Virus record (IMG/VR): IMGVR_UViG_3300020477_000990
Coordinates: 62,001 to 126,000 of that record
Length of the DNA: 64,000 nucleotides
Reading direction: 5' to 3' (one strand)
Shown: positions 18,556-57,846 of the stretch, piece by piece
How the letters are laid out: every line of letters starts with the position of its first letter
Position numbering within the stretch: position 1 is the stretch's first letter
Program-made: the position numbers and the translations under genes
Notes under the pieces: model-generated
What the model was told of the DNA's origin: nothing
The model's database searches: none
What the model saw: only the letters and a program-made list of their open reading frames with translations

Positions 18556-18823
18556 AGTTTTCTTTATAGCAAAAATAAAAAATTTTGATGAAGAATATTA
18601 TGATTATAGTAAAAGAGTTAGAGAAAAAGCAGAGACTATGCCCGGGTTCATAAATATTATATCAGAAGAAAAAGATGATGTTGAAATTACAATTAGCTCA
18701 TGGAAAACAAAAGAAGATGTAGAAGCTTGGAGGAAAGATCCATTGCACATGGAAGCAAAAGCAAAAGCAAAAGAATGGTATCATTGGGTTAAAGGAATTC
18801 ACGTAGAGGCAGTAGATGAGTAA
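18548..18823 (+). CDS. Antibiotic-biosynthesis monooxygenase (ABM) family protein
   Basis: MPGF..ITISSWK...VEAWRKDPLHMEA...WY. Confidence 0.75.
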   Translation: MIKVFFIAKIKNFDEEYYDYSKRVREKAETMPGFINIISEEKDDVEITISSWKTKEDVEAWRKDPLHMEAKAKAKEWYHWVKGIHVEAVDE

Positions 18824-24228: not shown

Positions 24229-24253
24229 CATTCGTTATTAAATAGTATATAAT
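24225..24253 (+). promoter_or_regulatory. Sigma70-type promoter GTGACA-N17-TATAAT
   Basis: Boxes at 24225-30 and 24248-53, upstream of fpr. Confidence 0.5.
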
Positions 24254-24275
24254 ATGCAGTAATAAAGAGGAATTA

Positions 24276-26411: not shown

Positions 26412-26414
26412 GTT

Positions 26415-29144: not shown

Positions 29145-30138
29145 AATAGAAGGTACAAATATAACGTTTGAAGATGTTGGAGCATTAAAATTAAAAGGTC
29201 TTAATGCATATGGTATAGAAGTAACCAATTTATCTTATCCATTTGAAGAAAGAGAAATAGAATTAATTAAATATTTAATTGCAGATCAATTATTAGTTGT
29301 TTTGCCAAAGTGCAATTTATCTGTAGATCAATTTTATAACTTATGTGATCAATTAGGAGTAGTTAGTACGTATGGACAATATCGTAGTCGTAAACTTCTT
29401 GATAATACAAAATTTTATTCCTATTTAGATAAAGATGATTGTCCAATATATCCTGGATTAGTAAGAGTTACAGGTGAAAAAGATAGTAAAGGAAATTTTT
29501 TAGGAATAGCACCTGGGCATAGTACGTTATTAAATTGGCATAATGATCAAGCTGGACGTGATGCTGTAAAAGTTAAAAGAAATGATAAAATAAAAGGTAT
29601 ATGGTCATACGAAAGACCACTTCCAGAAGTTATTGCTTTACAAGGAGTAAAAGGAACTAAAGGTAGTATTACTGAAATATGTCAACTAGTTGATTCTTAT
29701 AATGCTGAAGATTTAAGCATTAAAAACTGGTTTAAAAATGTTCGATTAGAATGGGGATATGTAGATGGAGAAGATAAAATATATGATTCTGATGTAGTAC
29801 ATAAGGAAGATAAAATAAAAAGAATACTTCCAATTGTAACTAAAGCAATAAATGGTAAAGAAGGGTTACATTTTTCTCCAAGCCAAACAGTAGCTATCGA
29901 TGGTAAATCAGAAAAAGAATATAATGAATTAAAAGAATATATAATGAAAAATTATGTAAATCAAAATTACATATATAGACACTATTGGAATGATGGTGAT
30001 ATTATTTTTACTGATCAAAAAACGTCAATTCATAGACGTGTTGGAACTCATAAAGAAACAATTCCTATGCAAAAATTAAGTAAAAGATTATTGCACCATG
30101 TTGAAATACATATTCATAATTTGAATAATGCCTCCTAA
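29137..30138 (+). CDS. TauD/TfdA-like dioxygenase (canonical HxD)
   Basis: WHND, HYWNDGDIIFTDQ..SIHRR. Confidence 0.8.
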   Translation: MYKIEGTNITFEDVGALKLKGLNAYGIEVTNLSYPFEEREIELIKYLIADQLLVVLPKCNLSVDQFYNLCDQLGVVSTYGQYRSRKLLDNTKFYSYLDKDDCPIYPGLVRVTGEKDSKGNFLGIAPGHSTLLNWHNDQAGRDAVKVKRNDKIKGIWSYERPLPEVIALQGVKGTKGSITEICQLVDSYNAEDLSIKNWFKNVRLEWGYVDGEDKIYDSDVVHKEDKIKRILPIVTKAINGKEGLHFSPSQTVAIDGKSEKEYNELKEYIMKNYVNQNYIYRHYWNDGDIIFTDQKTSIHRRVGTHKETIPMQKLSKRLLHHVEIHIHNLNNAS

Positions 30139-33231: not shown

Positions 33232-34584
33232 ATGTCAAATAAATATATGTATATGGAAACTAAAATAAAAAATAGTAATGTCAGCAGTTTGACTCATTTA
33301 AAAGATATTAGTAAAATTTCAAAAACTTTTTGCGTATATCCATTTACCGTAATGTTTGTTGGATCAGGTGGAACACCTGTTCCTTGTTGTATTAGTGAAC
33401 ATCATAAACATCCAGTAAAAGGAGAAGGATCTACTGAAAAAGGTGAGTTTATTCTTCCTCATAATTCATTAAAAGACTATTGGAATTCAGAAGCAATAAA
33501 CAGATTAAGACAACGATTACTTGAAGGTAAAAAAGATCCAGGGTGTAAACGTTGTTGGGTTGATGAAGCACAAGGGCAATCATCAAAACGTATTAAAGAT
33601 GCAACAAAGATACCTGGAGCAAATTTAGATGAGTTAACTTTAGAGCAATTTAAAGAGCAAGTAATTAAAAGGCCAAAAGTATTATGGATTGATTTACAAA
33701 TGGCAAACTTATGTAATATGGCCTGCCGTATGTGTAATCCATGGAACAGTTCTGAAATTGAAAGAGAATCAGAAAAGCATAAAGAATTAATATCACAAAA
33801 TAAAACATTTAAAGAACTTTGGGTAGAACCTTTACCAGAAGTAAAAAAAACAAAAGATTATTGGAGAGATCCTAAATTTACAAAAGAATTAGAAGAGTTA
33901 ATTCCTACTTTAGAATGTTTAACTGTAAGTGGTGGTGAACCAACAGTCAACAAATACTTTAATGATATTATTGATTTTTGTATTAGAGAAGGCCATGCTA
34001 AAAATTTAATACTTAAATTTAATACTAACGGACAACAAATTAATAGAAAGTATATGGATAAACTAGAGCCATTTAAGTATATTGAAATGAAAGTTAGTAT
34101 TGATGGAACTGGAACAGTTTTTGATTATATACGTCATCTAGGCAAATGGGAAACAGTATCTAAGAATAGAATTATGTTTGAAGAATATAGATCAGAACGA
34201 TTCGATGTTAATAGTGATCCAACATATCAAGTTTTAAATATATTAAATTTACCAGAACTATTACAATGGCATTTAGATAATGATTTAAAAGTTACAAATT
34301 TAAATCCAGTTCATGTTCCAGAATTTTATAATATATCTTGCTTACCAAATCAAATTCGTGAAGTTGCTTATAATAAATTGCATAAATTTCTTACAGACGA
34401 TTTGCATACTACTTTAAAAGAAAGTATTGAAAATGTTTTATTGCATTTACAGGCAGAGGATATTACTTTTCAAAATAGATGGTACCCTAAATTTTTCCAA
34501 CATACTGAAATGCTGGATAAAATGAGAGGCCAATCATTTGAAAAAATGGTTCCAGAATTATATAATTTAACCAAGAATAAATAA
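33232..34584 (+). CDS. N-terminal-twitch radical SAM protein
   Basis: FCVYPF..PCC..CKRC; ANLCNMACRMC; SGGEP; SIDG. Confidence 0.85.
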   Translation: MSNKYMYMETKIKNSNVSSLTHLKDISKISKTFCVYPFTVMFVGSGGTPVPCCISEHHKHPVKGEGSTEKGEFILPHNSLKDYWNSEAINRLRQRLLEGKKDPGCKRCWVDEAQGQSSKRIKDATKIPGANLDELTLEQFKEQVIKRPKVLWIDLQMANLCNMACRMCNPWNSSEIERESEKHKELISQNKTFKELWVEPLPEVKKTKDYWRDPKFTKELEELIPTLECLTVSGGEPTVNKYFNDIIDFCIREGHAKNLILKFNTNGQQINRKYMDKLEPFKYIEMKVSIDGTGTVFDYIRHLGKWETVSKNRIMFEEYRSERFDVNSDPTYQVLNILNLPELLQWHLDNDLKVTNLNPVHVPEFYNISCLPNQIREVAYNKLHKFLTDDLHTTLKESIENVLLHLQAEDITFQNRWYPKFFQHTEMLDKMRGQSFEKMVPELYNLTKNK

Positions 34585-37006: not shown

Positions 37007-38062
37007 ATGATACATATTATCGGTGGCGGTATTATCGGTTTAAGTACGGCTTATCAATTAAGTAAGCATTGTGACGTCACGGTTTACGAAAAGGATAATA
37101 GTTTCAGTTTAAGTAGTTTTGCTAGAAGTTGTGGCGGCTTTAGAAGTCAGTTTTATACACCTACAAATATTGATATGAGTAGATATAGTATAGATTTTAT
37201 AAAGAATCATACTGACGTAGAGTTTACAAGCAATGGTTATTTAATGTTGTTTGGTAATAATCAAAAAGAAGATCATGATGCTAGTATTGAAACACAAAAG
37301 GCACACGGTGCTACGACTATAAGTTTAACGCCTAGTCAAATTAAAGATAAGTTTCCACAAATATATGTAGATGATTTATACAGAGGTTGTATTACTACTG
37401 ATGATTCTGAAGGATGGCTTGACCCTGTAACTTTACACAAATGGTTTAAAGATCAAGCACAGGCAAATGGTGTTAAAATTATATACAAAGATGGATTAGA
37501 AGTTGATCATAGTTCAGCAGATAAAATTATTATAACCTGTGGGTGTTGGACTAATGATGTAGCTAAACATTTTAATATAAATGTTCCTGTTAAAGGACAT
37601 AAGCATACAGTCTTTAATGTATCTACACAAATAGAGCAAATAAAACATTTACCATTAGTTGCAGATTTAATAACCGGAATTTATATACGTCCAGAAGGTA
37701 ATGATTATATTGTTGGGTATGATGGTAATGCAGAATGGGATAGTGATAATTTAGATCCTAATTATAATAGTTGGGACAAAGTATGGGAGTACTTATATCA
37801 TAGATTTCCAACTGTATTTGATGCCGCGAAAATGGAAGGTGCGTGGGCTGGATATTATGATACATCAACTATTGATAATAATGCAATTATAGATAATGTG
37901 GATAACATTTATTTTGCTACAGGATTTACAGGTAGAGGCCTTATGCATAGTCCAGCAGTTGGATTAACTCTAACAGAAATGATACTTGATAAGCAATTGA
38001 CTTTTGACGTAGAATCTTATAAACTACAACGTAACCCAAACATTGAAAAATATGTTATTTAA
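37007..38062 (+). CDS. FAD-dependent oxidoreductase (DAO/sarcosine-oxidase-beta-like)
   Basis: IIGGGIIGLS, WAGYYD, ATGFTGRGLMHSPAVG. Confidence 0.88.
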   Translation: MIHIIGGGIIGLSTAYQLSKHCDVTVYEKDNSFSLSSFARSCGGFRSQFYTPTNIDMSRYSIDFIKNHTDVEFTSNGYLMLFGNNQKEDHDASIETQKAHGATTISLTPSQIKDKFPQIYVDDLYRGCITTDDSEGWLDPVTLHKWFKDQAQANGVKIIYKDGLEVDHSSADKIIITCGCWTNDVAKHFNINVPVKGHKHTVFNVSTQIEQIKHLPLVADLITGIYIRPEGNDYIVGYDGNAEWDSDNLDPNYNSWDKVWEYLYHRFPTVFDAAKMEGAWAGYYDTSTIDNNAIIDNVDNIYFATGFTGRGLMHSPAVGLTLTEMILDKQLTFDVESYKLQRNPNIEKYVI

Positions 38063-39340: not shown

Positions 39341-39369
39341 TTTTGCTCTTAGGTGAGCAAAATTTTTTT
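39341..39369 (+). terminator. Intrinsic-terminator-like hairpin in a gene leader
   Basis: TTTTGCTC-TTAGGT-GAGCAAAA followed by T7. Confidence 0.6.
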
Positions 39370-39400
39370 GACTGATGGAAAAAAGAAAAGAGGATATAAT

Positions 39401-40225
39401 ATGACACAATTAATAAATCCAAGTAAATTTACAGATGTTTCGGGCCGTTTACGGTCCTTTTTTTTGGCTAAAGGTTTTCAAGAAGTTCATACACAGAATA
39501 GATTAAGTATATTGGCGGCTTGTGAAGACCCTGGTACGGTATCAACCTATAACTATGCCGGGCAAGTCTGGCCCTTACCACAAACGGGCCAAATGTGGCT
39601 CGAATATGAATTACTTACAAAGCCAGCTACGCCTGGCTTTTTTTGTGTCTCCACTTCCTATAGGCAAGAACCAAATCCTATAGATGGTAGACATGATTTA
39701 ATATTTCCAATGTTTGAGTTTGAGTTCCCTGGAACAATTAAAGACTTAGAAGTAATGGAAAAGGAATTAGTAGAATATATGGGGTATTGTAAACAAGAAG
39801 ATGTAGTTGCTAAAGATTACATTGATTGGGCTAAAGAGTTTAATACAAATGAATTAGGACATGATCACGAAGAACAAATGTGTGAAGGCAATAAAATATG
39901 TATGATACAAAACTTTCCAAATTATACATCACCGTTTTGGAATATGAAACAAAATGGAGATGGAACAGCGGCTAAAATAGATGTTATTATAGCAGGTCAA
40001 GAAACAATAGGTTCAGCTGAAAGATCAACTGATAAAGCAGAGATGAGAGATATGTTTAATACAATTAGTGAAGGAATGTATGCTGATTTATTGTTTGGTA
40101 AGTTTGGTAAAGATAGAGTAAACAAAGAACTAGATGAATTTTTAAGTTATGACTTTATGCCTAGAGTAGGTGGCGGAATAGGATTAACTAGATTAATTCG
40201 TGCTGATAGTATAATTAATGGTTGA
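39401..40225 (+). CDS. Class II (Asp/Asn/Lys) aminoacyl-tRNA-synthetase catalytic-domain paralog
   Basis: SYRQE..RH..FPMFEFE (motif 2), ETIGSAER, GGGIGLTRL (motif 3); no anticodon-binding domain. Confidence 0.8.
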   Translation: MTQLINPSKFTDVSGRLRSFFLAKGFQEVHTQNRLSILAACEDPGTVSTYNYAGQVWPLPQTGQMWLEYELLTKPATPGFFCVSTSYRQEPNPIDGRHDLIFPMFEFEFPGTIKDLEVMEKELVEYMGYCKQEDVVAKDYIDWAKEFNTNELGHDHEEQMCEGNKICMIQNFPNYTSPFWNMKQNGDGTAAKIDVIIAGQETIGSAERSTDKAEMRDMFNTISEGMYADLLFGKFGKDRVNKELDEFLSYDFMPRVGGGIGLTRLIRADSIING

Positions 40226-40408: not shown

Positions 40409-41131
40409 ATGAAACCAACAGCAAGTGATATAGAAACTCATAAAAAATTAATAGAAGATACTTACGATACTAAAGTAACGTTTATTGAAACTCAACAATT
40501 GAATACAGGTTGGATAGTATATTCTGATAATGATTATGTCTATAAAACTTGGTATTATGAGAATACTATTGGGCATTCCTTAAACGAAGTTCATAAAGAA
40601 TTTTATGCATATCATAAAAGTAAAATGTTAGTAGACTATAGAACATTTAAACCTTATGGTTGTATTATGAAGCTAATTAAAATACCAGGAGTTCCATTAA
40701 GATATGTAGATTATAAAACTCGTATTAAAATAAATTTAGATAATTTTATAGAGTGGTGGGTAAAAGAAACAGTTCATATACATGAAGTTGGCTTAAAATT
40801 ATCTAGTGTAAGTGAAAGGTTTCAAATTCCAAAGTATTCAACTACAAAATCATTAATGTTTACTAATTGGCCCGAACACATCGGGTATGTTTTTTGCTTT
40901 GCTGATTTAAATGATGAAAATATAATGTATGATGAAAAGTCTGATACATTTAATTTTATTGACTTTGAACCAATTGGATGGATGCCACGCGATATGTATT
41001 GGTGTCTTAATGATGCATATTTAATACTTTTGCTTGAAAATACTTTTGACTGTAAGACTCAGGGAGTTAAAGCTTCAAAATATTTAGACACCGTATCATC
41101 AGAATTAAAAAGAAGATTAGAACTAGTCTAG
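40409..41131 (+). CDS. Protein-kinase-like/phosphotransferase-fold protein
   Basis: VYK, ADLNDENIM catalytic-loop-like segment, FIDFE. Confidence 0.5.
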   Translation: MKPTASDIETHKKLIEDTYDTKVTFIETQQLNTGWIVYSDNDYVYKTWYYENTIGHSLNEVHKEFYAYHKSKMLVDYRTFKPYGCIMKLIKIPGVPLRYVDYKTRIKINLDNFIEWWVKETVHIHEVGLKLSSVSERFQIPKYSTTKSLMFTNWPEHIGYVFCFADLNDENIMYDEKSDTFNFIDFEPIGWMPRDMYWCLNDAYLILLLENTFDCKTQGVKASKYLDTVSSELKRRLELV

Positions 41132-41710: not shown

Positions 41711-42361
41711 ATGCCATATTTTTTAAAAACATACAACAAAACTTTAGTGTATCATTTATGTCCAAAGAATGCTTGTACAACAATTGCTCATATGTTAATT
41801 CAAGCTGATGGTAATGGATATGTTAATGACACACATAAAGATTATTATATAGTGCATAGTTTATCTAATCCAAATAATAATTATGAGTATTGGACTAATT
41901 GTGATGCAGAAATTAAGTTAGCAGTTAAACGTGATCCAGTTAAACGTTTTGTTAGTGCATATAAAAATAGAATTGTGTATCATGATGATTTAAGTAAAGA
42001 TGAATATTTTGATAAAGCATTAGAAAAAGATTTTAAACCTTGGCCAATTTATAATAGATCATCAGATAAAACTATAAATGAGTTTATACAAAATTTTGAC
42101 AAGTATTGGGAAAATCCGTGGGTGCAAGGGCATTTTAAATCACAAACAACTTTCTTAGGAAAGCAAGATTATTATACACATATATTTGATATGTCTGAGT
42201 TAGATAAAGTACGAGACTTAATTGCTGAAGTATCTGGTAAAGAAATAGTATTACCTTGCTTACAAACAGGTGGAAATGATATTAGTGTAGACTTATCAGA
42301 AGATAGTATAAAATGGATTAATGATAGGTATGCTGAAGATTATGAAAACGGATGGTATTAA
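41711..42361 (+). CDS. Sulfotransferase family 2-like protein
   Basis: PKNACTT, RDPVKRFVSAY, HFKSQT. Confidence 0.8.
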   Translation: MPYFLKTYNKTLVYHLCPKNACTTIAHMLIQADGNGYVNDTHKDYYIVHSLSNPNNNYEYWTNCDAEIKLAVKRDPVKRFVSAYKNRIVYHDDLSKDEYFDKALEKDFKPWPIYNRSSDKTINEFIQNFDKYWENPWVQGHFKSQTTFLGKQDYYTHIFDMSELDKVRDLIAEVSGKEIVLPCLQTGGNDISVDLSEDSIKWINDRYAEDYENGWY

Positions 42362-43746
42362 ATACAAGTATGGAAAACATTAAAATAAATTTAGTTTGGG
42401 ATAACTGGTCTGATAAAGGACCTTTACCAAATGGGCTACATCCAAAATATATAAATGAATGGGAAACTAAATGGAAGGACAGATATGATATTAATGTTCT
42501 TACACGTTTTATTCCGTTAGATAGATATAATTTAGGATTTTTTCCTTTGCTATGCGATCAAGCTGGAATAGATATAACACATATAAAGCCAGAAGAAATA
42601 GGAGCAAATATTTCTAGTACACCTGATTGGTATGTAATGGAACCAAATCATATGGATCTATCATTGCTAACAGAAAATATGTTTGGTAATATAAATGAGC
42701 ATACTTTAAAAATGTTACGTGAAGGACAAACAAAACTAATATTGTATTATGCATATGAAGCCTTTCCAGTAAATCAAGTGAACTGGATTAATGTTATTGA
42801 AAGAAGTTTAGGCTGGCTTAAAATACCAAAAGAAAACTTTATATTAATATTTGGTGATCAAAAGTTTGATGAAAATTATCAAAAATATCTAGCATCTGGG
42901 CAAGGTCCTTTTTATGCTTATTACTTACAAAATGTTTTTGTGTATGATCATTTTGCTTGGGAGTTTTCAGATTATATTAAAAGTATGGTAATAGGAACTG
43001 AAAGAGAATCAAAAGAACTTGTTCCTATTGATGGTGATACAATGTATAAGCCAAGACCTAAAAAATTTTTATGTTTAAATGGTGGAGGTCGTCCACATAG
43101 AAAATGGCTAATGACAGAGTTAAAAAGAAATAATCTATTAGATCATGGAATAGTTAGTTATCTAAATAAATTTGATATACCATATGATCCAGCTGACTTT
43201 GTTTTTGTTCCAAGTGAAAAAGGTACTGGTGATACAGCATTGTTAGAAGCAGTTCGGTATCATCATGAGCATGGAAATGATATAAAAGAAATACAATTAG
43301 ATGTTGATCCTGTGCATGATGCTTGGCATAATAGAGGAATGACAGTACAACATTATAAAGATACATACTTTAATGTTACAACAGAAACATGGCCAGCTGA
43401 ACCTAGTTTCTTTGTTACTGAAAAATTATTTAAACCAATTATTAATATGCAACCTTTTATACTAGTAGGGCACCCTGGCTTATTAAAATATTTACATGAA
43501 GAAGGTTATGAAACATTTGATCAAATTTGGTTTGATGAGCATTATGATTCTATTCCTAACCATAAAGAACGTTTTTATCATGTAATGGAAAATATTAAAA
43601 ATGTTTGTGCATTAGATCAATCAGAGTTACAAAATATGTATGTTAAAGTATGGGATAAATTAAGACACAATCGAGAATTATTTTTAAAGAAAAATCATAC
43701 TAACTATTGGATTGAACTTATAAAAACAATGATAGAGATAAAATGA
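42352..43746 (+). CDS. Putative glycosyltransferase (C-terminus resembles GT10/GT-B)
   Basis: YFNVTTET...FVTEKLFKPI..QPFILVG motif. Confidence 0.45.
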   Translation: MVLNTSMENIKINLVWDNWSDKGPLPNGLHPKYINEWETKWKDRYDINVLTRFIPLDRYNLGFFPLLCDQAGIDITHIKPEEIGANISSTPDWYVMEPNHMDLSLLTENMFGNINEHTLKMLREGQTKLILYYAYEAFPVNQVNWINVIERSLGWLKIPKENFILIFGDQKFDENYQKYLASGQGPFYAYYLQNVFVYDHFAWEFSDYIKSMVIGTERESKELVPIDGDTMYKPRPKKFLCLNGGGRPHRKWLMTELKRNNLLDHGIVSYLNKFDIPYDPADFVFVPSEKGTGDTALLEAVRYHHEHGNDIKEIQLDVDPVHDAWHNRGMTVQHYKDTYFNVTTETWPAEPSFFVTEKLFKPIINMQPFILVGHPGLLKYLHEEGYETFDQIWFDEHYDSIPNHKERFYHVMENIKNVCALDQSELQNMYVKVWDKLRHNRELFLKKNHTNYWIELIKTMIEIK

Positions 43747-45014
43747 GTAACTATAAAGAAACTATAGATAAACTTGATAAAGATTTTGGTAAAACTTTTT
43801 GTATAAAACCTTTTACTGAAATATCAACGTCATCAGTTGGGCATATGAAATTATGTTGCTTTTCACAAAGCATTGGTAGTAATAATATGGCATATTATCA
43901 AGATAAATTTGAAAATGTTTTTCAAAATAATAATGATTTAATAACAATTAGAAAAGCAATGCTTGAAGGAAAAGCAATTAAAGAATGTCGTAATTGTTAT
44001 GTTGAAGAAAAAAATGGAAAAATATCTCAACGACAAGAAGAAAACTTTATAATGTATAATGAAAACAAAGAATTATTTAATAATATAATAAACAAAGGAA
44101 CAGCAATAGTAAAAAGTATTGATTTAAAGTTTGGTAACAAATGTAATTATGCCTGTATAATGTGTGATACAGGATCAAGCTCTTTACATTCAAAAGAAAT
44201 AGAAGCTAATCCACATCCTGATGATGTTAGAAAAGTAATAAATTTTGAACCATACTATTTTAATTTTCCTGATGAAAAAATGGATGATCTTTTATCAATA
44301 TCATCTAACTTGGGACGTGTTAAAAGTACAGGTGGAGAGCCATTTCTTTTAGATGGCTTTAAAGATTATATTAAAAAATTAGTTGACAACGGCTATGCTA
44401 AAAATATTGATTTTACAACGGTGTCAAATGGCACAGTTGATTGTACTGATCTTTTACCATATATGAATCAATTTAAATCATTTAGATTAAGATGGTCAAT
44501 TGATGGAACTGATAAAGTTTATAATTTTATTAGATACCCTGGTAGTTTTGATAGAATGAGTAGAGTACATAAAAAAATATCTGAAAGCATTATTAGTAAT
44601 AACTATACTAATGTTGAAGTTCAATTAGATCCTACAATACAATTGTTTAATGTGCATAACATAGTTGAGTTATTAAAATATGCAGAGTCTTTAAAAATAA
44701 TTAGTAGAGTAGAAATGGGGTACATTTATAAAGAACCTAGGTATTTAGATACATCATTAATGCCTATAGACATTTTACGCAATATATTTGATAGTGCTGA
44801 CAACGAAATTAAAAATATTAATGTAGTAAGCAATTATAATGATATTAAAGAACTTGCTTTTAAAAAGCATAATGAATATACAGAAAGTCAAAAGAAAGAT
44901 ATTTTTAATTTAACAAAAAGTATGGTTGCTTATTGGAAAAGAGTAAGAAAGTTAGAAGCTAAAGAGCATATTTCAACTTATGATAAACTAATAGAACATT
45001 ATTCTAAGATGTAA
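43743..45014 (+). CDS. N-terminal-twitch radical SAM protein
   Basis: FCIKPF..KLCC..CRNC; KFGNKCNYACIMC; TGGEPF; WSIDG. Confidence 0.85.
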   Translation: MSNYKETIDKLDKDFGKTFCIKPFTEISTSSVGHMKLCCFSQSIGSNNMAYYQDKFENVFQNNNDLITIRKAMLEGKAIKECRNCYVEEKNGKISQRQEENFIMYNENKELFNNIINKGTAIVKSIDLKFGNKCNYACIMCDTGSSSLHSKEIEANPHPDDVRKVINFEPYYFNFPDEKMDDLLSISSNLGRVKSTGGEPFLLDGFKDYIKKLVDNGYAKNIDFTTVSNGTVDCTDLLPYMNQFKSFRLRWSIDGTDKVYNFIRYPGSFDRMSRVHKKISESIISNNYTNVEVQLDPTIQLFNVHNIVELLKYAESLKIISRVEMGYIYKEPRYLDTSLMPIDILRNIFDSADNEIKNINVVSNYNDIKELAFKKHNEYTESQKKDIFNLTKSMVAYWKRVRKLEAKEHISTYDKLIEHYSKM

Positions 45015-45900: not shown

Positions 45901-46698
45901 TTATATGTATCTGTTAAATCCCCAGAATCGTTCGCGACACCACCAACACTCTTTGCAATGGAATTCCATGTTAGGGTCTTTCATGTATTCGACATCTCCA
46001 CCATTTTCACAACTTCTAGTAATAGGAAATAGCTCGTCTAGTATACCTTGACTTTTATATAATTCTGCTATAGATCTTTTATTAAAGTTTCTAAATGGTT
46101 GTTGCCAACACCAACCTTCTGCTTCTTCTAATTCTTCTGTAGTAGATCCTGTTTCGTATGTAACATCTGGATCTCTTTCATATAGATATGCCGCTTGATC
46201 CATTCTCATGTGTTTAATGCCATCATGATAATCTTCATATAATTCTCTTAGATCTTTAGGAGGATTAGCTGTCATACCATTAAAGAATATAACTCCGCGG
46301 CCTTCTGGATTGTTTTCTTGTGCTAAAATATTAGCTTCGTTTTCTTTTTGAGCTTTGTCATAGTTACTTAATCTAACTTGTTCATCTGAATCACTACCTA
46401 AATATGTTACTTCGTCAACTTTCATTTGGTTTTGACGTCTATCAGACATATCAATACCTGTAAGTTCTTGTATTTTATCACAGACTTTATTAGTATATCT
46501 AATGTGCCAATCTTTTGGAGGATATCCATTTGTTGTTGCTATAATTATTTTAAGATCTGGTCTTTCTTCTTTTTTATACTTTGCAATACAATATGCCATC
46601 ATAGCACTATCGGCACCACCTGACATTTTAAGTATGGCTGTATGATGATTGCTAGGTATATCTAAATTCCAATTTCCTTGTGGGGTAGTAAAAATCAT
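45901..46698 (-). CDS. QueC-like PP-loop ATPase (second paralog)
   Basis: MSGGADS; SC...CKECWWC; PFRNFNK..IA. Confidence 0.75.
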   Translation of the reverse strand: MIFTTPQGNWNLDIPSNHHTAILKMSGGADSAMMAYCIAKYKKEERPDLKIIIATTNGYPPKDWHIRYTNKVCDKIQELTGIDMSDRRQNQMKVDEVTYLGSDSDEQVRLSNYDKAQKENEANILAQENNPEGRGVIFFNGMTANPPKDLRELYEDYHDGIKHMRMDQAAYLYERDPDVTYETGSTTEELEEAEGWCWQQPFRNFNKRSIAELYKSQGILDELFPITRSCENGGDVEYMKDPNMEFHCKECWWCRERFWGFNRYI

Positions 46699-46701: not shown

Positions 46702-47721
46702 TTATCCTAATATTTTCTTTACTCTTAATTCGTCTTGATCAGTAACTACATGAAATTCTATTCTATGTAGTAATCTTCTTTCTAATTTTTTCATTGTAAG
46801 TCCTGCAACGTCACCTTTAACATCAGTACGTCTATGGATACAGTTAACTTGGTCCATATATAATATATCGCCATCGTCCCATATATGATCATATATGTAA
46901 TCTTCTTGTACATAATTGTCCATAAAGTAATTTTTAAAATCAATGAACTCACTAGTAGACGCACCTATAATTTCTGTTACTTGTGATGGAGAAAAGTGTA
47001 CACCTTCTTTACCATTAGTACAAATTGCTACTAAAGGTTTAACTTTATTCATAAGGTGGTCTCCACCATGACCAAATTCTATATTTCTATAACTTTCATC
47101 TACGTCTGGGATAATACCTTCTTCACCATCAACAAAGCCCCAACGTACTTGAGTGTTACGCATCCAAAATTTATGTTCAGCACTTTCTTTTTCAAACCTA
47201 TCAATAGTTTGACATACTTGAGTAACTGAACCTGTAGTTCCTTCTACACCTTGTAAGCCAACAAACTCTGGTAATGGTCTTTCAATGTAACCTTTAATTG
47301 ATTTATTACCTGGTAAGTAAAAAGGAATTTTATCACGTAATGATTCTGCATTGTGCCAATTTAATCTTTTACTAAAGCCTGCGGCAACACCTTCATATGA
47401 TGTACCTTTTTTATTAGACCATTTTTTCTTTGCTGTTACTTTGTCAAGTCCAGGATATATCGGACAACCGTCTTCATCATAGTAACCAGTAAGGTGTTTA
47501 GTTGGAACATCTTTCTTTTGTCCATGAGTTGCTACTGTACCTAATAAACCTGATAGTTCATAAAATTGTTCTACATTAAAATTAACTTTTTTAAGAGCTA
47601 CAACTAATTCTTGTTTTAGTAAGTGTGCAAGGTCATGTACGTCTTGATAGTTGAAAGGATATTTTAATCCTGTAACTTTAACACCATATTTTCCAAATAG
47701 TTTTTTCTTTTGTACTTTCAT
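46702..47721 (-). CDS. TauD-like Fe/2OG enzyme with HxA motif
   Basis: WHNAES in place of WHND; HIWDDGDILYMDQVNCIHRR. Confidence 0.78.
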   Translation of the reverse strand: MKVQKKKLFGKYGVKVTGLKYPFNYQDVHDLAHLLKQELVVALKKVNFNVEQFYELSGLLGTVATHGQKKDVPTKHLTGYYDEDGCPIYPGLDKVTAKKKWSNKKGTSYEGVAAGFSKRLNWHNAESLRDKIPFYLPGNKSIKGYIERPLPEFVGLQGVEGTTGSVTQVCQTIDRFEKESAEHKFWMRNTQVRWGFVDGEEGIIPDVDESYRNIEFGHGGDHLMNKVKPLVAICTNGKEGVHFSPSQVTEIIGASTSEFIDFKNYFMDNYVQEDYIYDHIWDDGDILYMDQVNCIHRRTDVKGDVAGLTMKKLERRLLHRIEFHVVTDQDELRVKKILG

Positions 47722-48755
47722 TAAACCATAACCTCTAATCTATTTAATAAACGTTCTTCTAACGCAGTCATATCTAAACCATCAACAGCATAATTCATAT
47801 CTGTTCTTCTATGCATACAAGTAATTTGATCCATATAAAATATATCACCATCTTGCCATACATGATCATAGATATATTCTGGAGTAACATACTCATCCAT
47901 AATTCTTTGTTTAAGTTCTTTCCATTGATTTGATGCTACATAATCTTCAGCTAATATTTTTTTATGTTCATCATCGTATAATATTTTAGTAGTACCATCA
48001 GCAATTTCATTTGATATATCAACAACTTGACTAGGAGTAAATCTTAAACCTTCTTTACCATTTGGAGCAACTTGTACTAATGGTTGTTGTTTAATGTTTA
48101 ATTTAATAGCATCTTTATATTTGTCCATATCTTCTTTAGTTGACATTTCATCAGTACCATGAATATCATCATAACCTTCTTCACCTGGTTTAGGTAAGTC
48201 TGGCATAATACCTTCATCACCTGGAACTACACCCCAAAGTACATTTAATTTTTTTAATAGTTCTTTGTTTTCTTGAGGTTCTTTTTCAAATCTATCTATC
48301 ATTTGGCATACTTGAGTAATACTACCTGTTGTTCCTTTAACTCCTTGTAGTCCTACAAAGTTTGCCGCAGGATTAGTACTATCAGTTTCATTGTTATGCC
48401 AATTTAATCTTTTAGAAATACCAGTAGGCATTCCAGCATATCTTCCTTCTTTTGTTTTCTTTGCTGTTACTTTCCACATACCAGGAAGTATAGTTTTACC
48501 TTCATCATCTAAATAGCCAGTCCAACCAGTTGGTTCTGGGATACCTGCTTGTAATCCAAATGTGCTAATTTTACCTAGGCGTCCTGTAAGCTCATAATAC
48601 TGCTTTGCTGTATAGTTAATTTTAGGTAACACTACAACTAGTTCGTTAGTTAGCAATTTTTTAAGCTCAGCTATTTCGCCCCATTTAAATGGATATGAAA
48701 GCTCTGTTACAGATGCCCCCATATTTCCAAATCCTTTGAGTGGTGATACTTTCAT
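47721..48755 (-). CDS. TauD-like Fe/2OG enzyme with HxN motif
   Basis: WHNNETD; HVWQDGDIFYMDQITCMHRR. Confidence 0.78.
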   Translation of the reverse strand: MKVSPLKGFGNMGASVTELSYPFKWGEIAELKKLLTNELVVVLPKINYTAKQYYELTGRLGKISTFGLQAGIPEPTGWTGYLDDEGKTILPGMWKVTAKKTKEGRYAGMPTGISKRLNWHNNETDSTNPAANFVGLQGVKGTTGSITQVCQMIDRFEKEPQENKELLKKLNVLWGVVPGDEGIMPDLPKPGEEGYDDIHGTDEMSTKEDMDKYKDAIKLNIKQQPLVQVAPNGKEGLRFTPSQVVDISNEIADGTTKILYDDEHKKILAEDYVASNQWKELKQRIMDEYVTPEYIYDHVWQDGDIFYMDQITCMHRRTDMNYAVDGLDMTALEERLLNRLEVMV

Positions 48756-48931: not shown

Positions 48932-50284
48932 ATGGCAAGTTATGCAATTCAAAGACGTAGAGGAACAGCAGTAGAACACGGTTCTTTTACAGGTTTAGCA
49001 GGCGAGTTGACAGTTAACACTACGAGAAATTCAGTTCACGTACATGACGGTTCAGCGGCAGGCGGTCACGAATTAGCGAAAATCGACTTATCGAACGTAG
49101 CTTCAACTTCAATCGGTGCTCACTTACTTCCTTCAGCAAACGTAACTTACAACTTAGGTTCATCTTCAAAAATGTGGGGTGATATCTACGTAGGTCCTTC
49201 AACACTTTATATTAATGGTGTTGCGGCAATGGGTGTTGACTCAGGTGACGTTACTTTATCTGGTGATACAGATGAAAACGTTGTTGTAAAAGCACTTGGT
49301 TCAGGTGATGTTGAATTAACTCCAGCAACTGGTTCAGTTCAGTTAAAAGGTAACATTCAAGTTGCAGATGGAAAAGCATTTTCATCAGCAGGTTCGGAAA
49401 TCGACTTCAATTCTGACATTCAATTAAATTCAAACGATATCTTAGGCGTTGGTACAGGTAACATAGGCGCAAGTTCGGCTATGCCTAGATCATATGCTGA
49501 TACTAGATATGCAATGTTAACTGGCGCACAAAACATCGCTGGTAACAAAACATTCGATAATAACGTAATTGTTTCTGGAGACTTAACAGTTTCTGGTACA
49601 ACTACAACAGTTAATACAGAAACTATCAAATTAGCTGACAACTTAATTGAGTTAAACTCAAACGAAACTGGTGCACCATCAGACAACGCAGGTATTGAAA
49701 TTAACAGAGGTACTTCTGCAAACGTTCAATTCAGATGGAATGAAACTTCAGATATTTGGGAATTAACTTTAGACGGTACTACATTCTACCAAACGTATTC
49801 TACTAATGATGCGGCTACGGCTAATACAGCTAGTAAACTAGTTCTTAGAGATGGTTCAGGTAACTTTGCGGCAGGTACTATAACTGCTACAGCAACTTCG
49901 GCGCAATACGCGGATTTGGCTGAGAGATATGGTTCTGATGCACAATACGATGCAGGTACAGTTGTTGTATTTGGCGGCGATAAAGAAATTACTATGTCTT
50001 CAGCGGCATATGATCATAAAGTAGCAGGTGTTATTTCTTCAGCACCAGCGTACATGATGAACGCAGAAGCAGGTGATGACGCTACTCACCCATTTGTTGC
50101 ACTTACAGGAAGAGTTCCTTGTAAAGTAACAGGTACAGTTAGAAAAGGTGATTTACTTTGCACTTCAGACGTGGCAGGTCATGCTATGGCTGGCGAAGCA
50201 AAATGTGGTCACATGATTGGTAAAGCATTGGAAGATTTCGATGGCGAAACAGGTGTTATCGAAGTATTAATTAACTTAATGTAA
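48932..50284 (+). CDS. Tail fibre/structural protein with Mtd-like N-terminus and C-terminal chaperone-like domain
   Basis: IQRRRGT..FTGLAGELTV..VHDG; IKLADNLIELN..AGIEINRG; YADLAERY...IGKALE. Confidence 0.8.
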   Translation: MASYAIQRRRGTAVEHGSFTGLAGELTVNTTRNSVHVHDGSAAGGHELAKIDLSNVASTSIGAHLLPSANVTYNLGSSSKMWGDIYVGPSTLYINGVAAMGVDSGDVTLSGDTDENVVVKALGSGDVELTPATGSVQLKGNIQVADGKAFSSAGSEIDFNSDIQLNSNDILGVGTGNIGASSAMPRSYADTRYAMLTGAQNIAGNKTFDNNVIVSGDLTVSGTTTTVNTETIKLADNLIELNSNETGAPSDNAGIEINRGTSANVQFRWNETSDIWELTLDGTTFYQTYSTNDAATANTASKLVLRDGSGNFAAGTITATATSAQYADLAERYGSDAQYDAGTVVVFGGDKEITMSSAAYDHKVAGVISSAPAYMMNAEAGDDATHPFVALTGRVPCKVTGTVRKGDLLCTSDVAGHAMAGEAKCGHMIGKALEDFDGETGVIEVLINLM

Positions 50285-54645: not shown

Positions 54646-55881
54646 CTACTGTGAAATTCGCCCTAATATTGAACACATTTTTTCAGCTGAATACCCACGT
54701 GCTTTATCATAATAGGCCAATAAATCTTGGGTGTTTTTGTAGGTGTACGTTGTTTTACGTTTTTTAATTAGTTCTATAAAGTCAGATACAAAACTATATT
54801 TTGTAGCTTCAAAAGGCGATCCTGCTGATCTAATTAATAAAAGAACTTCATTAATAACTTCTTCTTTTATATCATCTGGAAGTATAGCCAAGTCTAATGG
54901 TTTAGGCCACATTACTAATACAGGAATAAATTCATCAAAGTTATTTTCTTCTGTGTATCTAATTAAATCAGGAAGTTGATCTAAATTTAATAATTGTATT
55001 GCTGATGTTAATACTGAACTAATATTATTAAAACCTTTTTCTTTAATTAATCTGTTAAACTTATATTGATTATTAAAAACTTTATTCCAAGTTGCAGGCC
55101 ATCTAATATATTCAAATGTACTACCCATTCCATCTGTAGACCAATGCACTTCAAATTTTTGAAACTTATTCATTATGTCTATCATCTTTGTTAAGTCAGT
55201 TGTACCATTTGTTACCATCATTATAGAAATGTTTCTTGCATATTTTGTTTCAGATAATCTTTTAATAAATTCTCTAAAGCCTTCTAATAATGTAGGCTCA
55301 CCTCCTGTAAATTTTATTTTTTGTATAGTATGAGCTGTACCTAATAATTCATTTAATTGCTTTTCATGGAAGTTAGTATTATGAGCATCATCTGGAATAT
55401 GTTTTTTTAAATGTAAAGGAACTTTATGTTGCTCTTTTTCTTTAACGTGTAAAGATGAACTATGTCCATCACACATAATACAAGCAAGATTACATTTGTT
55501 ACCAAACTTTATATCTAATGTTCTTAATTCTAAATGTTTATCTTTTTTAATTTTATTTAAAAAATCTGGATCAATATCTTCATAACGTTTTGTAATAGAA
55601 TATCTTTTACTCATATTGTATGCACCAGACTGTTCATATTGATAACATCTAGTACAAGACTTAACTGGTTTATTATCTAACATTTTTTGTCTAATGTCAT
55701 TTAATACTTTACTGTTTTTCCAATTATTAATAAATGAATCTTTATATAAATCTGCTTCAACAGTTTCTGAATAACAACATAACATTGAATGGCCTTGTGC
55801 TGAATTGGCTATTTCAGTAAATGGTAAAGCACAAAAATACTTGCCATGATCATTTAAAAACTTTTCATATTCTCTACTCAT
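54646..55881 (-). CDS. N-terminal-twitch radical SAM protein (similar to 43743..45014)
   Basis: FCALPF..LCC..CTRC; KFGNKCNLACIMC; TGGEP. Confidence 0.85.
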   Translation of the reverse strand: MSREYEKFLNDHGKYFCALPFTEIANSAQGHSMLCCYSETVEADLYKDSFINNWKNSKVLNDIRQKMLDNKPVKSCTRCYQYEQSGAYNMSKRYSITKRYEDIDPDFLNKIKKDKHLELRTLDIKFGNKCNLACIMCDGHSSSLHVKEKEQHKVPLHLKKHIPDDAHNTNFHEKQLNELLGTAHTIQKIKFTGGEPTLLEGFREFIKRLSETKYARNISIMMVTNGTTDLTKMIDIMNKFQKFEVHWSTDGMGSTFEYIRWPATWNKVFNNQYKFNRLIKEKGFNNISSVLTSAIQLLNLDQLPDLIRYTEENNFDEFIPVLVMWPKPLDLAILPDDIKEEVINEVLLLIRSAGSPFEATKYSFVSDFIELIKKRKTTYTYKNTQDLLAYYDKARGYSAEKMCSILGRISQ

Positions 55882-57130
55882 TTAGTTCTGCCCCAATGAC
55901 AGGTGTTAATCCTTTTACTGCTTTATTAAACATAGCTTCTGTCATATCGTTATGTTTTGATTTTTGTACACATAATCCACAGCCACATATTTTATTTGGA
56001 CAAGTTATTACAGGCATTTTACCTGTTGCTAATTGTTTTTCTAATCTTAATAATACTTTTTCACTTTCTGATATCTTACCAATAGGCCCACGTTTACCAC
56101 CAAAATTTGCACGACAAGTTTGATGGTGTAGTATATTATCATATTCTTGTTCAATATGTAACCAATTCCAATTAATTAAGCAAGACCAATCTTTGTATTC
56201 TGTTGAACACGCAAACACACTTGGATTCCATTTATCAGTATCAAGTTCTTTATTATTGTTATTATAATGATCATCAGTTAATGTATAAAATGTTCTTTGC
56301 CCACAGCAAGGTCTTCCTAAACTTTTTCTACCTTCATCTTTTTTAGGTTCAACTTTTGCTTTTTGTTTTTGTACTTTTTCTTGATCATCTTTATATTCAT
56401 ATTCAGCATCATTGTTTTCATCTATTTTTTTAGGTTGCTTTTGATTATTTTCTTTTTTATTTCTAATTGCCCAAAACTCTCTAAACCATTTATGTTGTTC
56501 TGGAGTATATCTATGATTGTACTTGTCATTTTCATAGCTCTCTCCAATAATTCTTGGTACAAATTTTACATTATCTCTTGTAAACTTTCCAACTAAATCA
56601 ATACATTCATTAAAGTATTCTTCTTTAGCATGAAACATTAAATTAACTTTGTGTCTAACATTTGAATCTTTTAATTGATAAATTCTATCTATTACTTTAT
56701 TTTTTATTTTTTGATCTGCTTCACAATGATAACTTACTGTTACACTATCAACATTATCAATTAATTTTGTACAATATTTTTCTGACATGGCACCATTAGT
56801 TGTTACATCAACTATTACATCATCATCATTTTGATTGTGTATGTATTCACACATATCTAAAAAGTTTGGATTGTTAGTTGGCTCACCGCCTGTAAAACCA
56901 ATGTTCCACTTACGTTTGTAAGTCATATATGATTGTAAAAGTTTTTTATAATCAAAAACAAACTTACTTGTTTTAATTAATGTTTCTAAACTTGCGTGAG
57001 GTGAAGTATTATTATGTCTATGTGAAGGACAATATGTACAATCAAAATTACATCTTAAACCTAAATCCCAAGTTACTTCAAATGAGTAAGGATTTTTTAT
57101 ATTATTATCTATTGCAATTATCTCTGACAT
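55874..57130 (-). CDS. Radical SAM protein with C-terminal twitch-like cysteines (same type as 15961..17127)
   Basis: WDLGLRCNFDCTYC; FTGGEPT; C-terminal C...CPNKICGCGLC. Confidence 0.85.
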   Translation of the reverse strand: MSEIIAIDNNIKNPYSFEVTWDLGLRCNFDCTYCPSHRHNNTSPHASLETLIKTSKFVFDYKKLLQSYMTYKRKWNIGFTGGEPTNNPNFLDMCEYIHNQNDDDVIVDVTTNGAMSEKYCTKLIDNVDSVTVSYHCEADQKIKNKVIDRIYQLKDSNVRHKVNLMFHAKEEYFNECIDLVGKFTRDNVKFVPRIIGESYENDKYNHRYTPEQHKWFREFWAIRNKKENNQKQPKKIDENNDAEYEYKDDQEKVQKQKAKVEPKKDEGRKSLGRPCCGQRTFYTLTDDHYNNNNKELDTDKWNPSVFACSTEYKDWSCLINWNWLHIEQEYDNILHHQTCRANFGGKRGPIGKISESEKVLLRLEKQLATGKMPVITCPNKICGCGLCVQKSKHNDMTEAMFNKAVKGLTPVIGAELNE

Positions 57131-57846
57131 TAATATCTATTAAACGCCCAATATCTTTCATGACACCACCAACAATCTTCACAAGGTGTAAGGTAACCAT
57201 TTGTTTGTTCAAATGTTCCTTCACATGACCAAGTCAACGGAAATAAATTGCTCATTAAGTTTTCTTGTTTGTAAATGTCAGCAATAAATTTTTTATCTGT
57301 ATTAAAAAAAGGTCTATGAGAAGAACCATCACTAGTAACTAGTTCATGATTAACTTTTGGATCTCGTCTATTTTTTTGATCAGTATCATAAGGCATTTCC
57401 CCTTTCGGTGGGTTAGATGTTATACCATCATATAAGACATCCCACACGCCTGTTTCTTCATTTTGTTTATTTCTATCTTGAAACTCTTTCCATTCAGTTT
57501 GATTTACATCTTTTAAATCTGGATAATAAACTAAATGAGGTAACATATTTCTAAAATTAAGTATTTCAGTAATTTTATTAATAACATGGGTTGCTTTTAT
57601 AGGATTCCATGGACGTTGTCTTCTAACTGACATTGGTTGTATCTTTACATCTAAATTATTTCTTATTACTTCTTTACAAAGTAAGTAAAGTAAAGCACTA
57701 GAGTCTGCTCCACCAGAACACCATATTCCTAGAGTCTTAACCTTGCGTCCATTATTGACAACACTTGGAATTATGATTTCAACTGATTCTGTTTTATCAA
57801 TATTATAATATTTTGCCGATACTTCTGTTAGTATTTCAAATGTCAT
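57130..57846 (-). CDS. QueC-like PP-loop ATPase (third paralog)
   Basis: CSGGADS; SC...CEDCWWC; N-terminus like 19340..20185 (EIIIP.VVNN). Confidence 0.75.
   Translation of the reverse strand: MTFEILTEVSAKYYNIDKTESVEIIIPSVVNNGRKVKTLGIWCSGGADSSALLYLLCKEVIRNNLDVKIQPMSVRRQRPWNPIKATHVINKITEILNFRNMLPHLVYYPDLKDVNQTEWKEFQDRNKQNEETGVWDVLYDGITSNPPKGEMPYDTDQKNRRDPKVNHELVTSDGSSHRPFFNTDKKFIADIYKQENLMSNLFPLTWSCEGTFEQTNGYLTPCEDCWWCHERYWAFNRY

What the first reader, a model, noticed from the sequence alone, without database searches (positions are those of the whole stretch)
46702..47721. TauD-fold enzyme with HxA instead of HxD: candidate phage halogenase
Seen: three paralogs align at the iron-binding motif as WHND (29137..30138), WHNA (this gene; codons TGG CAC AAT GCA on the - strand) and WHNN (47721..48755). 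All keep the distal His (IHRR/MHRR). Known: Asp/Glu to Ala/Gly at this position is the hallmark of Fe/2OG halogenases (SyrB2, WelO5, BesD), because it frees a site for halide. Inference: a hydroxylase was duplicated and one copy became a chlorinase or brominase in a marine phage. The adjacent HxN copy may have further altered chemistry.
Basis: partly seen in the sequence, partly recalled or inferred. Interest (0 to 1): 0.75.

Follow-up and report, generated by a model that had tools for sequence, protein, structure and literature searches.

The report
Phage TauD-like oxygenases lacking the iron-binding aspartate
A 328-kb marine phage carries three copies of a virus-specific iron/2-oxoglutarate oxygenase in which the usual iron-binding aspartate is Asp, Ala or Asn. 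The Ala copy is conserved and could be a halogenase, but an invariant neighbouring glutamate and the mostly Asn family make an unusual hydroxylase-type enzyme more likely.

Summary
Three TauD-family (PF02668) paralogs carry WH-N-D (29137..30138), WH-N-A (46702..47721) and WH-N-N (47721..48755). All three keep the distal His and the 2OG-binding Thr and Arg. The Ala is not a singleton: all 11 orthologs examined (about 45-73% identical) have Ala, encoded by GCA or GCT.

- **Family norm.** The family is virus-specific. Among 144 representatives the "carboxylate" position is Asn in 90, Asp in 42 and Ala/Gly in only 7, so HxN is the norm, including in cultured phages P-HM2 and Mosig.
- **One carboxylate per dipeptide.** In the clade holding the three paralogs, positions 125-126 read D-Q, A-E or N-E. 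Each member has exactly one carboxylate there, so Glu126 may replace Asp directly or through a water.
- **Precedent against the motif.** Human AspH is a natural 2-His hydroxylase that does not halogenate.
- **Neighbours.** The nearest structures and sequences are all hydroxylases or desaturases.
- **Missing test.** No tool returned coordinates, so the Glu126-to-iron distance could not be measured.

My estimates are about 0.5 for a non-canonical oxygenase and about 0.2 for a halogenase. The genes form a conserved array (TauD copies plus a PP-loop ATPase) beside a tail-fibre gene, within a roughly 60-kb iron-enzyme island.

The parts
46702..47721 (-). Paralog B, 339 aa. A TauD/TfdA-like Fe/2OG oxygenase with H123-x-A125, followed by E126.
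   Evidence: ORF. Pfam PF02668, 36.3 bits. AF2 model with pLDDT 84 and pTM 0.85. Foldseek matches to TauD, RdpA and TfdA with TM 0.6-0.78.
47344..47358 (-). Codons TGG CAC AAT GCA GAA, encoding W122 H123 N124 A125 E126. H123 is the proximal iron ligand, A125 replaces the Asp ligand, and E126 is invariant.
   Evidence: Alignment to the WHTD of a solved TauD-family chain.
46834..46836 (-). H296, the distal iron ligand. It is invariant in 146 of 146 aligned family members.
47221..47223 (-). T167, equivalent to TauD T126, which binds the 2OG C5 carboxylate. It is present in 145 of 146 members.
   Evidence: The equivalence to TauD T126 comes from the alignment and from general knowledge of TauD.
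46774..46776 (-). R316 in the RLLHR motif, equivalent to TauD R266, which binds the 2OG C5 carboxylate. It is present wherever that column is aligned.
   Evidence: (the alignment to 3swt ends in RLLHR)
47721..48755 (-). Paralog C, 344 aa, with H120-x-N122 followed by E123. It is the first gene of the array, and its stop codon overlaps B's start codon (TAATG).
45901..46698 (-). A PP-loop ATP pyrophosphatase with an SGGADS motif and a QueC-like Cys-rich C-terminus. It starts 3 nt after B's stop and is conserved downstream of the array in related phages.
   Evidence: Pfam QueC 22.6 bits, C-terminal part only. 61% identical to the L006 homolog and 41% to the L010 homolog.
29137..30138 (+). Paralog A, 333 aa, with the canonical H135-x-D137 followed by Q138. 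It is the last gene of a roughly 30-kb operon of iron and radical-SAM enzymes.
48932..50284 (+). A tail-fibre-like gene with an Mtd_N domain, transcribed divergently from the TauD array. This arrangement is conserved in related phage contigs.
   Evidence: Pfam PF18454. The same arrangement appears in L006/L007 and L011.

Best explanation
Gene B encodes an active Fe(II)/2-oxoglutarate oxygenase of a virus-specific branch of the TauD/TfdA family. This branch has largely given up the canonical Asp ligand.

Proposed mechanism:
- His123 and His296 hold the iron.
- 2OG chelates the iron, with its distal carboxylate held by Arg316 and Thr167.
- The third protein position (Ala125) is empty.
- The invariant Glu126 next to it supplies the missing carboxylate, either by binding iron directly (a shifted H-x-x-E triad) or by holding a water at that site, as the second-sphere Asp does in AspH.
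- The enzyme then performs ordinary ferryl chemistry such as hydroxylation or a related oxidation, not halogenation.

B works in a translationally coupled operon with the Asn-type paralog C and a PP-loop ATPase, on a shared substrate that is still unknown. This module sits beside tail-fibre genes inside a large phage island of iron, Fe-S and radical-SAM enzymes.

Shown: the fold, the motif states, their conservation, the operon and its synteny. Inferred: iron and 2OG binding, the role of Glu126 and the reaction type.
For: - **Enzyme integrity.** W122, H123, T167, H296, R298 and R316 are invariant or nearly so across 146 aligned family members, whatever the state at position 125.
- **Family state.** At position 125 the 144 representatives show N 90, D 42, A 5, G 2, H 3, E 1 and S 1. 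The family tolerates loss of the carboxylate while keeping everything else. Cultured phages P-HM2 (WHSNE) and Mosig (WHSNG) show the same.
- **One carboxylate per dipeptide.** In the 17-row clade (SH-aLRT 99) plus the related loci, positions 125-126 read D-Q (winA, P0166), A-E (11 sequences) or N-E (8 sequences). Each has exactly one carboxylate, and Glu is never lost when position 125 is A or N.
- **Family-wide trend.** An acid at +1 is commoner when position 125 has no carboxylate: 34 of 63 against 3 of 20.
- **Position of the +1 residue.** In TauD the +1 residue (Val102) is part of the pocket next to the iron ligands (PMC9304159).
- **Precedent.** AspH is a 2-His enzyme with water at the carboxylate site that hydroxylates and does not halogenate (PMC13168262).
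- **Neighbours.** All sequence and fold neighbours are hydroxylases, desaturases or decarboxylases.
- **Operon.** The stop and start codons overlap. Arrays of 2-4 copies plus the PP-loop gene are conserved in 4 other phage contig types.
Against: - No coordinates were available, so whether Glu126 can reach the iron or its water is untested.
- The association between carboxylate loss at 125 and an acid at 126 is not significant once phylogeny is respected: 11 independent pairs, 2-4 going the opposite way, p about 0.25.
- Twenty-nine of 63 carboxylate-free members have no acid at +1 either. Glu126 therefore cannot be a general replacement and may be a substrate-binding residue instead.
- Some members keep both D and E (HSDE, HCDE).
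- Ala is strictly maintained rather than drifting among small residues, and every array keeps both an A-type and an N-type copy. This suggests the two have different chemistry, which fits a halogenase/hydroxylase pair.
- An H-x-x-E triad has no precedent known to me in 2OG oxygenases.
Confidence: 0.5

Rival explanations
1. B is an Fe/2OG radical halogenase. Ala125 frees a coordination site for chloride or bromide, a haloferryl species abstracts hydrogen, and the halogen rebounds. The Asn-type and Asp-type paralogs hydroxylate, or process the halogenated intermediate.
For: - The 2-His plus Ala/Gly motif is the marker of all known radical halogenases. Mining on it found new ones that were validated (PMC13489965).
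- Ala125 is conserved in all 11 orthologs with synonymous codons.
- A-type and N-type copies are always kept side by side.
- A-type looks derived from a D-type ancestor by GAT to GCT.
- The habitat is seawater.
- A phage halogenase has one precedent, the flavin-dependent VirX1 (PMC8407142).
- AlphaFold DB, the database mined in that study, holds no viral proteins. This family would therefore have been missed.
Against: - The invariant Glu126 adjoins the vacant site, and the published criterion requires that no other coordinating residue be near. This is untested here.
- Within the orthologous clade Ala and Asn have interchanged (P0009, HNNE, is nested among HCAE rows).
- The family background is HxN, not a loss from a strict HxD hydroxylase.
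- AspH shows that a natural 2-His site need not halogenate.
- No halogenase appears among the neighbours.
- No substrate or halogenated product is known.
Confidence: 0.2
2. The vacant site is completed by the substrate. A carboxylate, phosphate or other donor of the substrate binds iron at the Ala125 position, as substrates do in IPNS or ACC oxidase. Glu126 binds a cationic part of the substrate. The reaction could be an oxidation other than hydroxylation, such as desaturation, decarboxylation or ring formation.
For: - The +1 residue is clade-specific across the family (E, Q, R, K, L, G), as expected of a specificity determinant. Its TauD equivalent lines the substrate pocket.
- Close fold neighbours include ScoE, PtlD, CarC and isonitrile desaturases, which do non-hydroxylating chemistry.
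- The adjacent PP-loop ATPase activates carboxylates or carbonyls in known family members (general knowledge of the PP-loop family).
Against: There is no direct evidence and the substrate is unknown. It does not explain why the dipeptide 125-126 always keeps exactly one carboxylate in this clade.
Confidence: 0.15
3. B is a catalytically dead or non-redox paralog, for example a binding or scaffolding subunit for the active copies.
For: Loss of a metal ligand is a common route to pseudoenzymes, and the copies occur in arrays.
Against: Both His residues, the 2OG-binding Thr and Arg, and about 25 other positions are invariant across orthologs down to 26% identity. The Ala itself is under selection. 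Sixty-two percent of the family would also have to be dead.
Confidence: 0.05

Closest known systems
TauD/TfdA-group Fe(II)/2OG dioxygenases (E. coli TauD, AtsK, RdpA/SdpA, TfdA; Pfam PF02668)
   Same: - The fold matches: Foldseek E 1e-14 to 1e-16, TM up to 0.78 by target.
- The motif N-W-H-x-[ligand] is shared.
- The distal His sits after a D-[QN] turn.
- The Thr and the Arg-x-x-x-Arg strand that hold 2OG and the substrate are present.
   Different: - The Asp ligand is Ala in B and Asn in most of the viral family.
- There is an extra invariant Arg two residues after the distal His.
- Identity is only 13-17%.
- The branch is virus-specific.
Fe/2OG radical halogenases (SyrB2, WelO5, BesD, AspX, BtnX)
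   Same: A 2-His site with Ala or Gly where the carboxylate should be, conserved among orthologs.
   Different: - They belong to different sub-families of the superfamily, and none is a detectable neighbour of B.
- B has a Glu immediately after the Ala.
- Halide binding and activity are untested.
Human aspartate/asparagine beta-hydroxylase AspH
   Same: A natural 2-His iron site in a 2OG enzyme that still hydroxylates. A water fills the carboxylate site and depends on a second-sphere acid (PMC13168262).
   Different: It belongs to a different family (PF05118) and acts on a protein substrate (EGF domains). Whether B holds a water in this way is unknown.
'Taurine catabolism dioxygenase' genes of cultured marine phages (P-HM1/P-HM2 PHM2_004, MED4-213, Pelagibacter phage Mosig_00075)
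   Same: They belong to the same viral family, are uncharacterised, and have Asn at the ligand position (WHSNE, WHSNG). In Mosig the gene lies in a similar cluster with a FA desaturase, an Asp_Arg_Hydrox gene and tail-fibre genes.
   Different: Identity is only 21-29%. They occur as single copies, not arrays, and none has Ala.

Membership tests
TauD/TfdA family Fe/2OG dioxygenase (PF02668) | TauD-type double-stranded beta-helix fold and a profile match above the curated cut-off | tested here: met
   36.3 bits against a cut-off of 27. The AF2 model matches TauD, RdpA and TfdA with probability 1.00.
TauD/TfdA family Fe/2OG dioxygenase (PF02668) | Proximal and distal His iron ligands | tested here: met
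   H123 and H296 are invariant in the family.
TauD/TfdA family Fe/2OG dioxygenase (PF02668) | Asp or Glu ligand two residues after the proximal His (the facial triad) | tested here: not met
   Ala125, codon GCA at 47347..47349. It aligns to the D of WHTD.
TauD/TfdA family Fe/2OG dioxygenase (PF02668) | Residues that bind the 2OG C5 carboxylate (Thr and Arg) | tested here: met
   T167 and R316 are conserved by alignment. Actual binding was not tested.
Fe/2OG radical halogenase | 2-His site with Ala or Gly at the carboxylate position, conserved in orthologs | tested here: met
   Eleven of 11 A-type orthologs have Ala, with codons GCA or GCT.
Fe/2OG radical halogenase | No other coordinating side chain within reach of the vacant site (criterion of PMC13489965) | not testable with these tools
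   The tools return no model coordinates, and the protein plus Fe complex job was not folded. The invariant Glu126 at +1 makes this the critical open point.
Fe/2OG radical halogenase | Halide bound to iron, and halide-dependent C-H halogenation | not testable with these tools
   This needs biochemistry or crystallography.
Fe/2OG radical halogenase | Relationship to a characterised halogenase lineage (supportive, not defining) | tested here: not met
   No halogenase appears among the 33 PDB sequence hits, the top 50 PDB fold hits or the top 30 Swiss-Prot fold hits.
AspH-like 2-His hydroxylase (functional analogy only) | Water at the carboxylate site, held by a second-sphere acid | not testable with these tools
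   Glu126 is a candidate, but there are no coordinates. B is not a member of PF05118.

The most novel reading that the evidence does not exclude
The virus-specific TauD-like family is a lineage of Fe/2OG enzymes that works without a protein carboxylate: 2-His-1-Asn in most members and 2-His in the Ala/Gly members. Within it, the conserved Ala-type copies such as gene B would be radical halogenases. They would be the first of the TauD/TfdA fold and the first iron halogenases in a virus. They would act in tandem with Asn-type copies and a PP-loop ATPase to build a halogenated, or cryptically halogenated, product during infection of a marine bacterium.
Probability: 0.18. Interest if true: 0.85.

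Novelty: new variant of a known kind. Interest (0 to 1): 0.6.

Why it matters
If Glu126 is a shifted ligand, or Asn is a ligand, this family adds a new primary coordination sphere to one of the best-studied enzyme superfamilies. It would also show that the facial triad is dispensable in nature on a large scale. These genes are widespread in marine phage metagenomes and have been annotated as "taurine catabolism dioxygenase", an auxiliary metabolic gene, since 2010. That annotation is almost certainly wrong.

If the Ala-type copies halogenate, they are a new and easily expressed halogenase scaffold. Structure-based mining could not have found them, because AlphaFold DB omits viral proteins. They would also point to halogenated metabolites made during phage infection in the sea.

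Either way, the A, B and C trio is a natural Asp/Ala/Asn series in one genome. It is well suited to testing what the third ligand does.

Tried and rejected
- **Iron placement.** I submitted protein B plus Fe to complex prediction to see which residues surround the metal. The job was counted but not folded, so it gives no evidence either way.
- **Coordinates.** No tool returns model coordinates, so the Glu126-to-iron distance could not be measured.
- **GenBank phages.** DNA and tblastn searches with B found nothing. Only more distant family members (query P0179, and paralog A) hit cultured phages.
- **Halogenase atlas.** The supplementary atlas of PMC13489965 is not held. I could not check whether any PF02668 cluster is in it.
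- **Amide-ligand precedent.** Literature searches for an Asn or Gln third ligand found nothing usable. The methylphosphonate synthase 2-His-1-Gln precedent rests on my memory only.
- **PP-loop partner.** It has no PDB sequence match and no NCBIfam assignment.
- **Deazaguanine DNA modification.** I considered this link because of the QueC-like genes. The genome has no TGT/DpdA, so I dropped it.
- **Read mapping.** Laying reads showed only a strain about 98% identical, with no listed change at the motif, and one 346-nt metatranscriptome contig on paralog C. That is too weak to claim transcription.
- **Direction of change.** Parsimony could not resolve the ancestral state of the A/B/C clade, which comes out as {A, N, D}.
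- **Pseudoenzyme.** I considered and rejected this reading on the conservation evidence.

Full report
**What is in the sequence.**
The window lies at 62001-126000 of a complete, terminally repeated virus record of 328,149 bp with 31.8% G+C. It holds exactly three TauD-family genes:
- A, at 29137..30138 on the plus strand, 333 aa.
- B, at 46702..47721 on the minus strand, 339 aa.
- C, at 47721..48755 on the minus strand, 344 aa.

All three pass Pfam's curated threshold for PF02668 and are 40-43% identical to each other. Ala125 of B therefore occupies the Asp-ligand position. The distal His (H296 in B), the Thr (T167) and the Arg (R316) that hold 2OG in TauD are all present. The AF2 model of B (pLDDT 84, pTM 0.85) matches TauD, AtsK, RdpA/SdpA, TfdA, PtlD, ScoE and CarC.

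**Is the Ala a singleton?**
It is not. The closest homologs in 5.8 billion proteins all read W-H-C-A-E (P0002-P0008 and P0019; 46-72% identical). So do two further copies read from related contigs. That makes 11 A-type sequences in all, with Ala encoded by GCA or GCT. The Asn of C is equally fixed in its orthologs (70-87% identical), and the Asp-Gln of A recurs in P0166. Each state is therefore maintained by selection in its own orthologous group.

**The family context changes the picture.**
A profile search of 1.84 billion representative proteins gave 1,737 hits. I aligned the best 150 to the profile. Both His residues are invariant in all 144 that cover the motif. The "carboxylate" position is Asn in 90, Asp in 42, Ala in 5, His in 3, Gly in 2, and Glu and Ser in 1 each. 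The ESM Atlas clusters nearest to B are 96-100% viral. Cultured members are the "taurine catabolism dioxygenase" of Prochlorococcus phages P-HM1, P-HM2 and MED4-213 and of Pelagibacter phage Mosig. P-HM2 reads W-H-S-N-E and Mosig reads W-H-S-N-G.

HxN is thus the norm of a virus-specific branch, not a further oddity of one copy. Across all classes the other catalytic residues stay invariant: W122, H123, T167, D285, D/E290, H296, R298 and R316. These are therefore working enzymes. No other acidic column appears specifically in the carboxylate-free members.

**Phylogeny.**
I built a maximum-likelihood tree of 83 members. A, B and C fall in one clade of 17 rows (SH-aLRT 99). In it, A plus P0166 (D-Q) is sister to 15 rows that are A-E (10) or N-E (5, plus P0009 nested among the A-E rows). 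Parsimony needs at least 16 changes of state over the tree, mostly Asn to Asp. It leaves the ancestor of the A/B/C clade ambiguous. At positions that distinguish the groups, A-type sequences agree with the D-type copy rather than with C-type. These positions are R129, the 129-149 loop, E147, Y265 and H319.

**The neighbouring Glu.**
Every A-type and N-type member of this clade, in the window and in four related contig types, has Glu at +1. The two D-type members have Gln there. The dipeptide 125-126 thus always carries exactly one carboxylate: D-Q, A-E or N-E. This is the pattern expected if the carboxylate has moved by one residue.

Family-wide, an acid at +1 is commoner when position 125 lacks a carboxylate: 34 of 63 against 3 of 20, Fisher p = 0.004. 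With phylogenetically independent pairs the trend is not significant (11 pairs, 2-4 opposite, 0-1 the same, p about 0.25). In addition, 29 of 63 carboxylate-free members have no acid at +1.

In TauD the +1 residue (Val102) belongs to the pocket beside the iron ligands. A Glu there could plausibly reach the metal or its water, but it could equally be a substrate-binding residue. I could not measure this. No tool returns coordinates, and the protein plus Fe job was not folded. The sequence evidence leans towards it.

**What the literature says about the inference.**
All known radical halogenases have the 2-His plus Ala/Gly site. Mining AlphaFold DB for 2-His sites with no further coordinating residue nearby gave 946 candidates out of 530,814 models, and two new halogenases were validated (PMC13489965). 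AlphaFold DB has no viral proteins, so this family was outside that search.

The motif is not sufficient, however. Human AspH binds iron with two His only, keeps a water at the carboxylate site with the help of a second-sphere Asp, hydroxylates, and does not halogenate even when offered pseudohalides (PMC13168262). The only characterised viral halogenase is the flavin enzyme VirX1 of cyanophage Syn10 (PMC8407142). From memory, not checked here: methylphosphonate synthase uses a 2-His-1-Gln site, which is a precedent for an amide ligand such as the Asn of C.

**Genomic setting.**
C, B and a PP-loop ATPase (45901..46698) form a tight operon. The C stop and B start codons overlap as TAATG, and there is a 3-nt gap before the PP-loop gene. 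The operon is transcribed divergently from a tail-fibre-like gene with an Mtd_N domain. The same module recurs in related marine phage contigs:
- L006/L007 have two copies (HNNE, HCAE).
- L008 has three copies (HNNE, HCNE, HCAE).
- L010/L011 have four copies (HNNE, HCAE, HCAE, HNNE).

A C-type copy always comes first. The PP-loop gene lies downstream of the array in L006/L007 and L010/L011 (61% and 41% identical to the window's copy), but no gene was called there in L008. The tail-fibre gene lies alongside in L006/L007 and L011.

Paralog A ends a roughly 30-kb operon (23..30138). That operon encodes a TonB-dependent receptor, SufB/C/D, two fatty-acid-desaturase-like proteins with a ferredoxin-reductase-like partner, and six radical-SAM enzymes. 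It also encodes two Asp/Arg-hydroxylase-family proteins, another 2OG oxygenase, a second PP-loop protein, a carbamoyltransferase and a UDP-glucose dehydrogenase. Contig L001 has the syntenic operon ending in two HCAE copies. The substrate cannot be named. The genome lacks TGT/DpdA, so a deazaguanine DNA modification is unlikely.

The locus is present in many marine metagenomes from several studies. One 346-nt metatranscriptome contig lies on C, which is weak evidence of expression.

**Verdict.**
B is best described as a non-canonical Fe/2OG oxygenase of a viral TauD-like family. Most likely (about 0.5) Glu126 provides the carboxylate function, directly or through a water, and the chemistry is hydroxylase-like. 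A radical halogenase remains a real possibility (about 0.2). It is favoured by the strict conservation of Ala and by the co-retention of A-type and N-type copies. A substrate-completed iron site is a further possibility (about 0.15), and a dead paralog is unlikely (about 0.05).

The more general result is that about two thirds of this abundant phage family carry Asn where the textbook triad has Asp. That was not part of the original finding and, as far as I could find, has not been described.

Noticed in passing
window 399..10095 (+): The phage encodes a TonB-dependent receptor (399..2213; Plug and beta-barrel domains) and a full SufB / SufC-like ABC ATPase / SufD-like set (3019..4485, 8847..9530, 9517..10095). 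They sit at the head of a 30-kb operon of iron enzymes. This looks like phage-supplied iron uptake and Fe-S assembly for its own radical-SAM enzymes.
   Followed up: partly
window 6294..8075, 12159..17127, 22846..24228, 33232..34584, 43743..45014, 54646..57130: The 64-kb window holds at least ten radical-SAM genes. Several have an N-terminal SPASM-like Cys cluster and one has a B12-binding domain. The pairing 'radical SAM(s) + QueC-like PP-loop protein' appears three times, with the PP-loop genes at 19289..20185, 45901..46698 and 57130..57846.
   Followed up: partly
L004 1090..2148 (Prochlorococcus phage P-HM2, PHM2_004); L005 2803..3612 (Pelagibacter phage Mosig_00075): Genes annotated 'taurine catabolism dioxygenase' in cultured marine phages have Asn at the Asp-ligand position (WHSNE, WHSNG). 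The auxiliary-metabolic-gene label 'taurine catabolism' is probably wrong for the whole viral family.
   Followed up: partly
window 10095..10805, 11217..12032 (-), 17124..17657: There are three further 2OG-oxygenase-superfamily genes: one 2OG-FeII_Oxy_3 and two Asp_Arg_Hydrox (the AspH/LpxO family, which is itself naturally 2-His in AspH). I did not inspect their ligand motifs.
   Followed up: no
window 37007..38062, 39353..40225, 40409..41131, 41711..42361: Between the two TauD loci lie an FAD-dependent oxidoreductase (DAO family), a 290-aa class-II aminoacyl-tRNA-synthetase-like catalytic core (tRNA-synt_2), a choline/aminoglycoside-kinase-like protein and a sulfotransferase. The aaRS-like and sulfotransferase genes recur beside the arrays in L010 and L008.
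   Followed up: no
window 27824..28333 and 28266..29144 (+): Two ORFs directly upstream of paralog A match no family in Pfam or PHROGs; the second also has no NCBIfam match (the first was not scanned there). In the syntenic L001 operon, unannotated genes of 207-218 aa occupy the same place.
   Followed up: no
window 48139..48465 (paralog C): A 346-nt contig from a polyA metatranscriptome (run X20) matches paralog C with 8 differences. This is possibly transcription in the field, but DNA carry-over is not excluded.
   Followed up: partly
genome G000:C1:269776-270147 (L012): A PTPS/QueD-like gene lies far from the window, while TGT/DpdA is absent from the complete genome. The three QueC-like PP-loop proteins are therefore unlikely to make deazaguanine-modified DNA.
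   Followed up: partly
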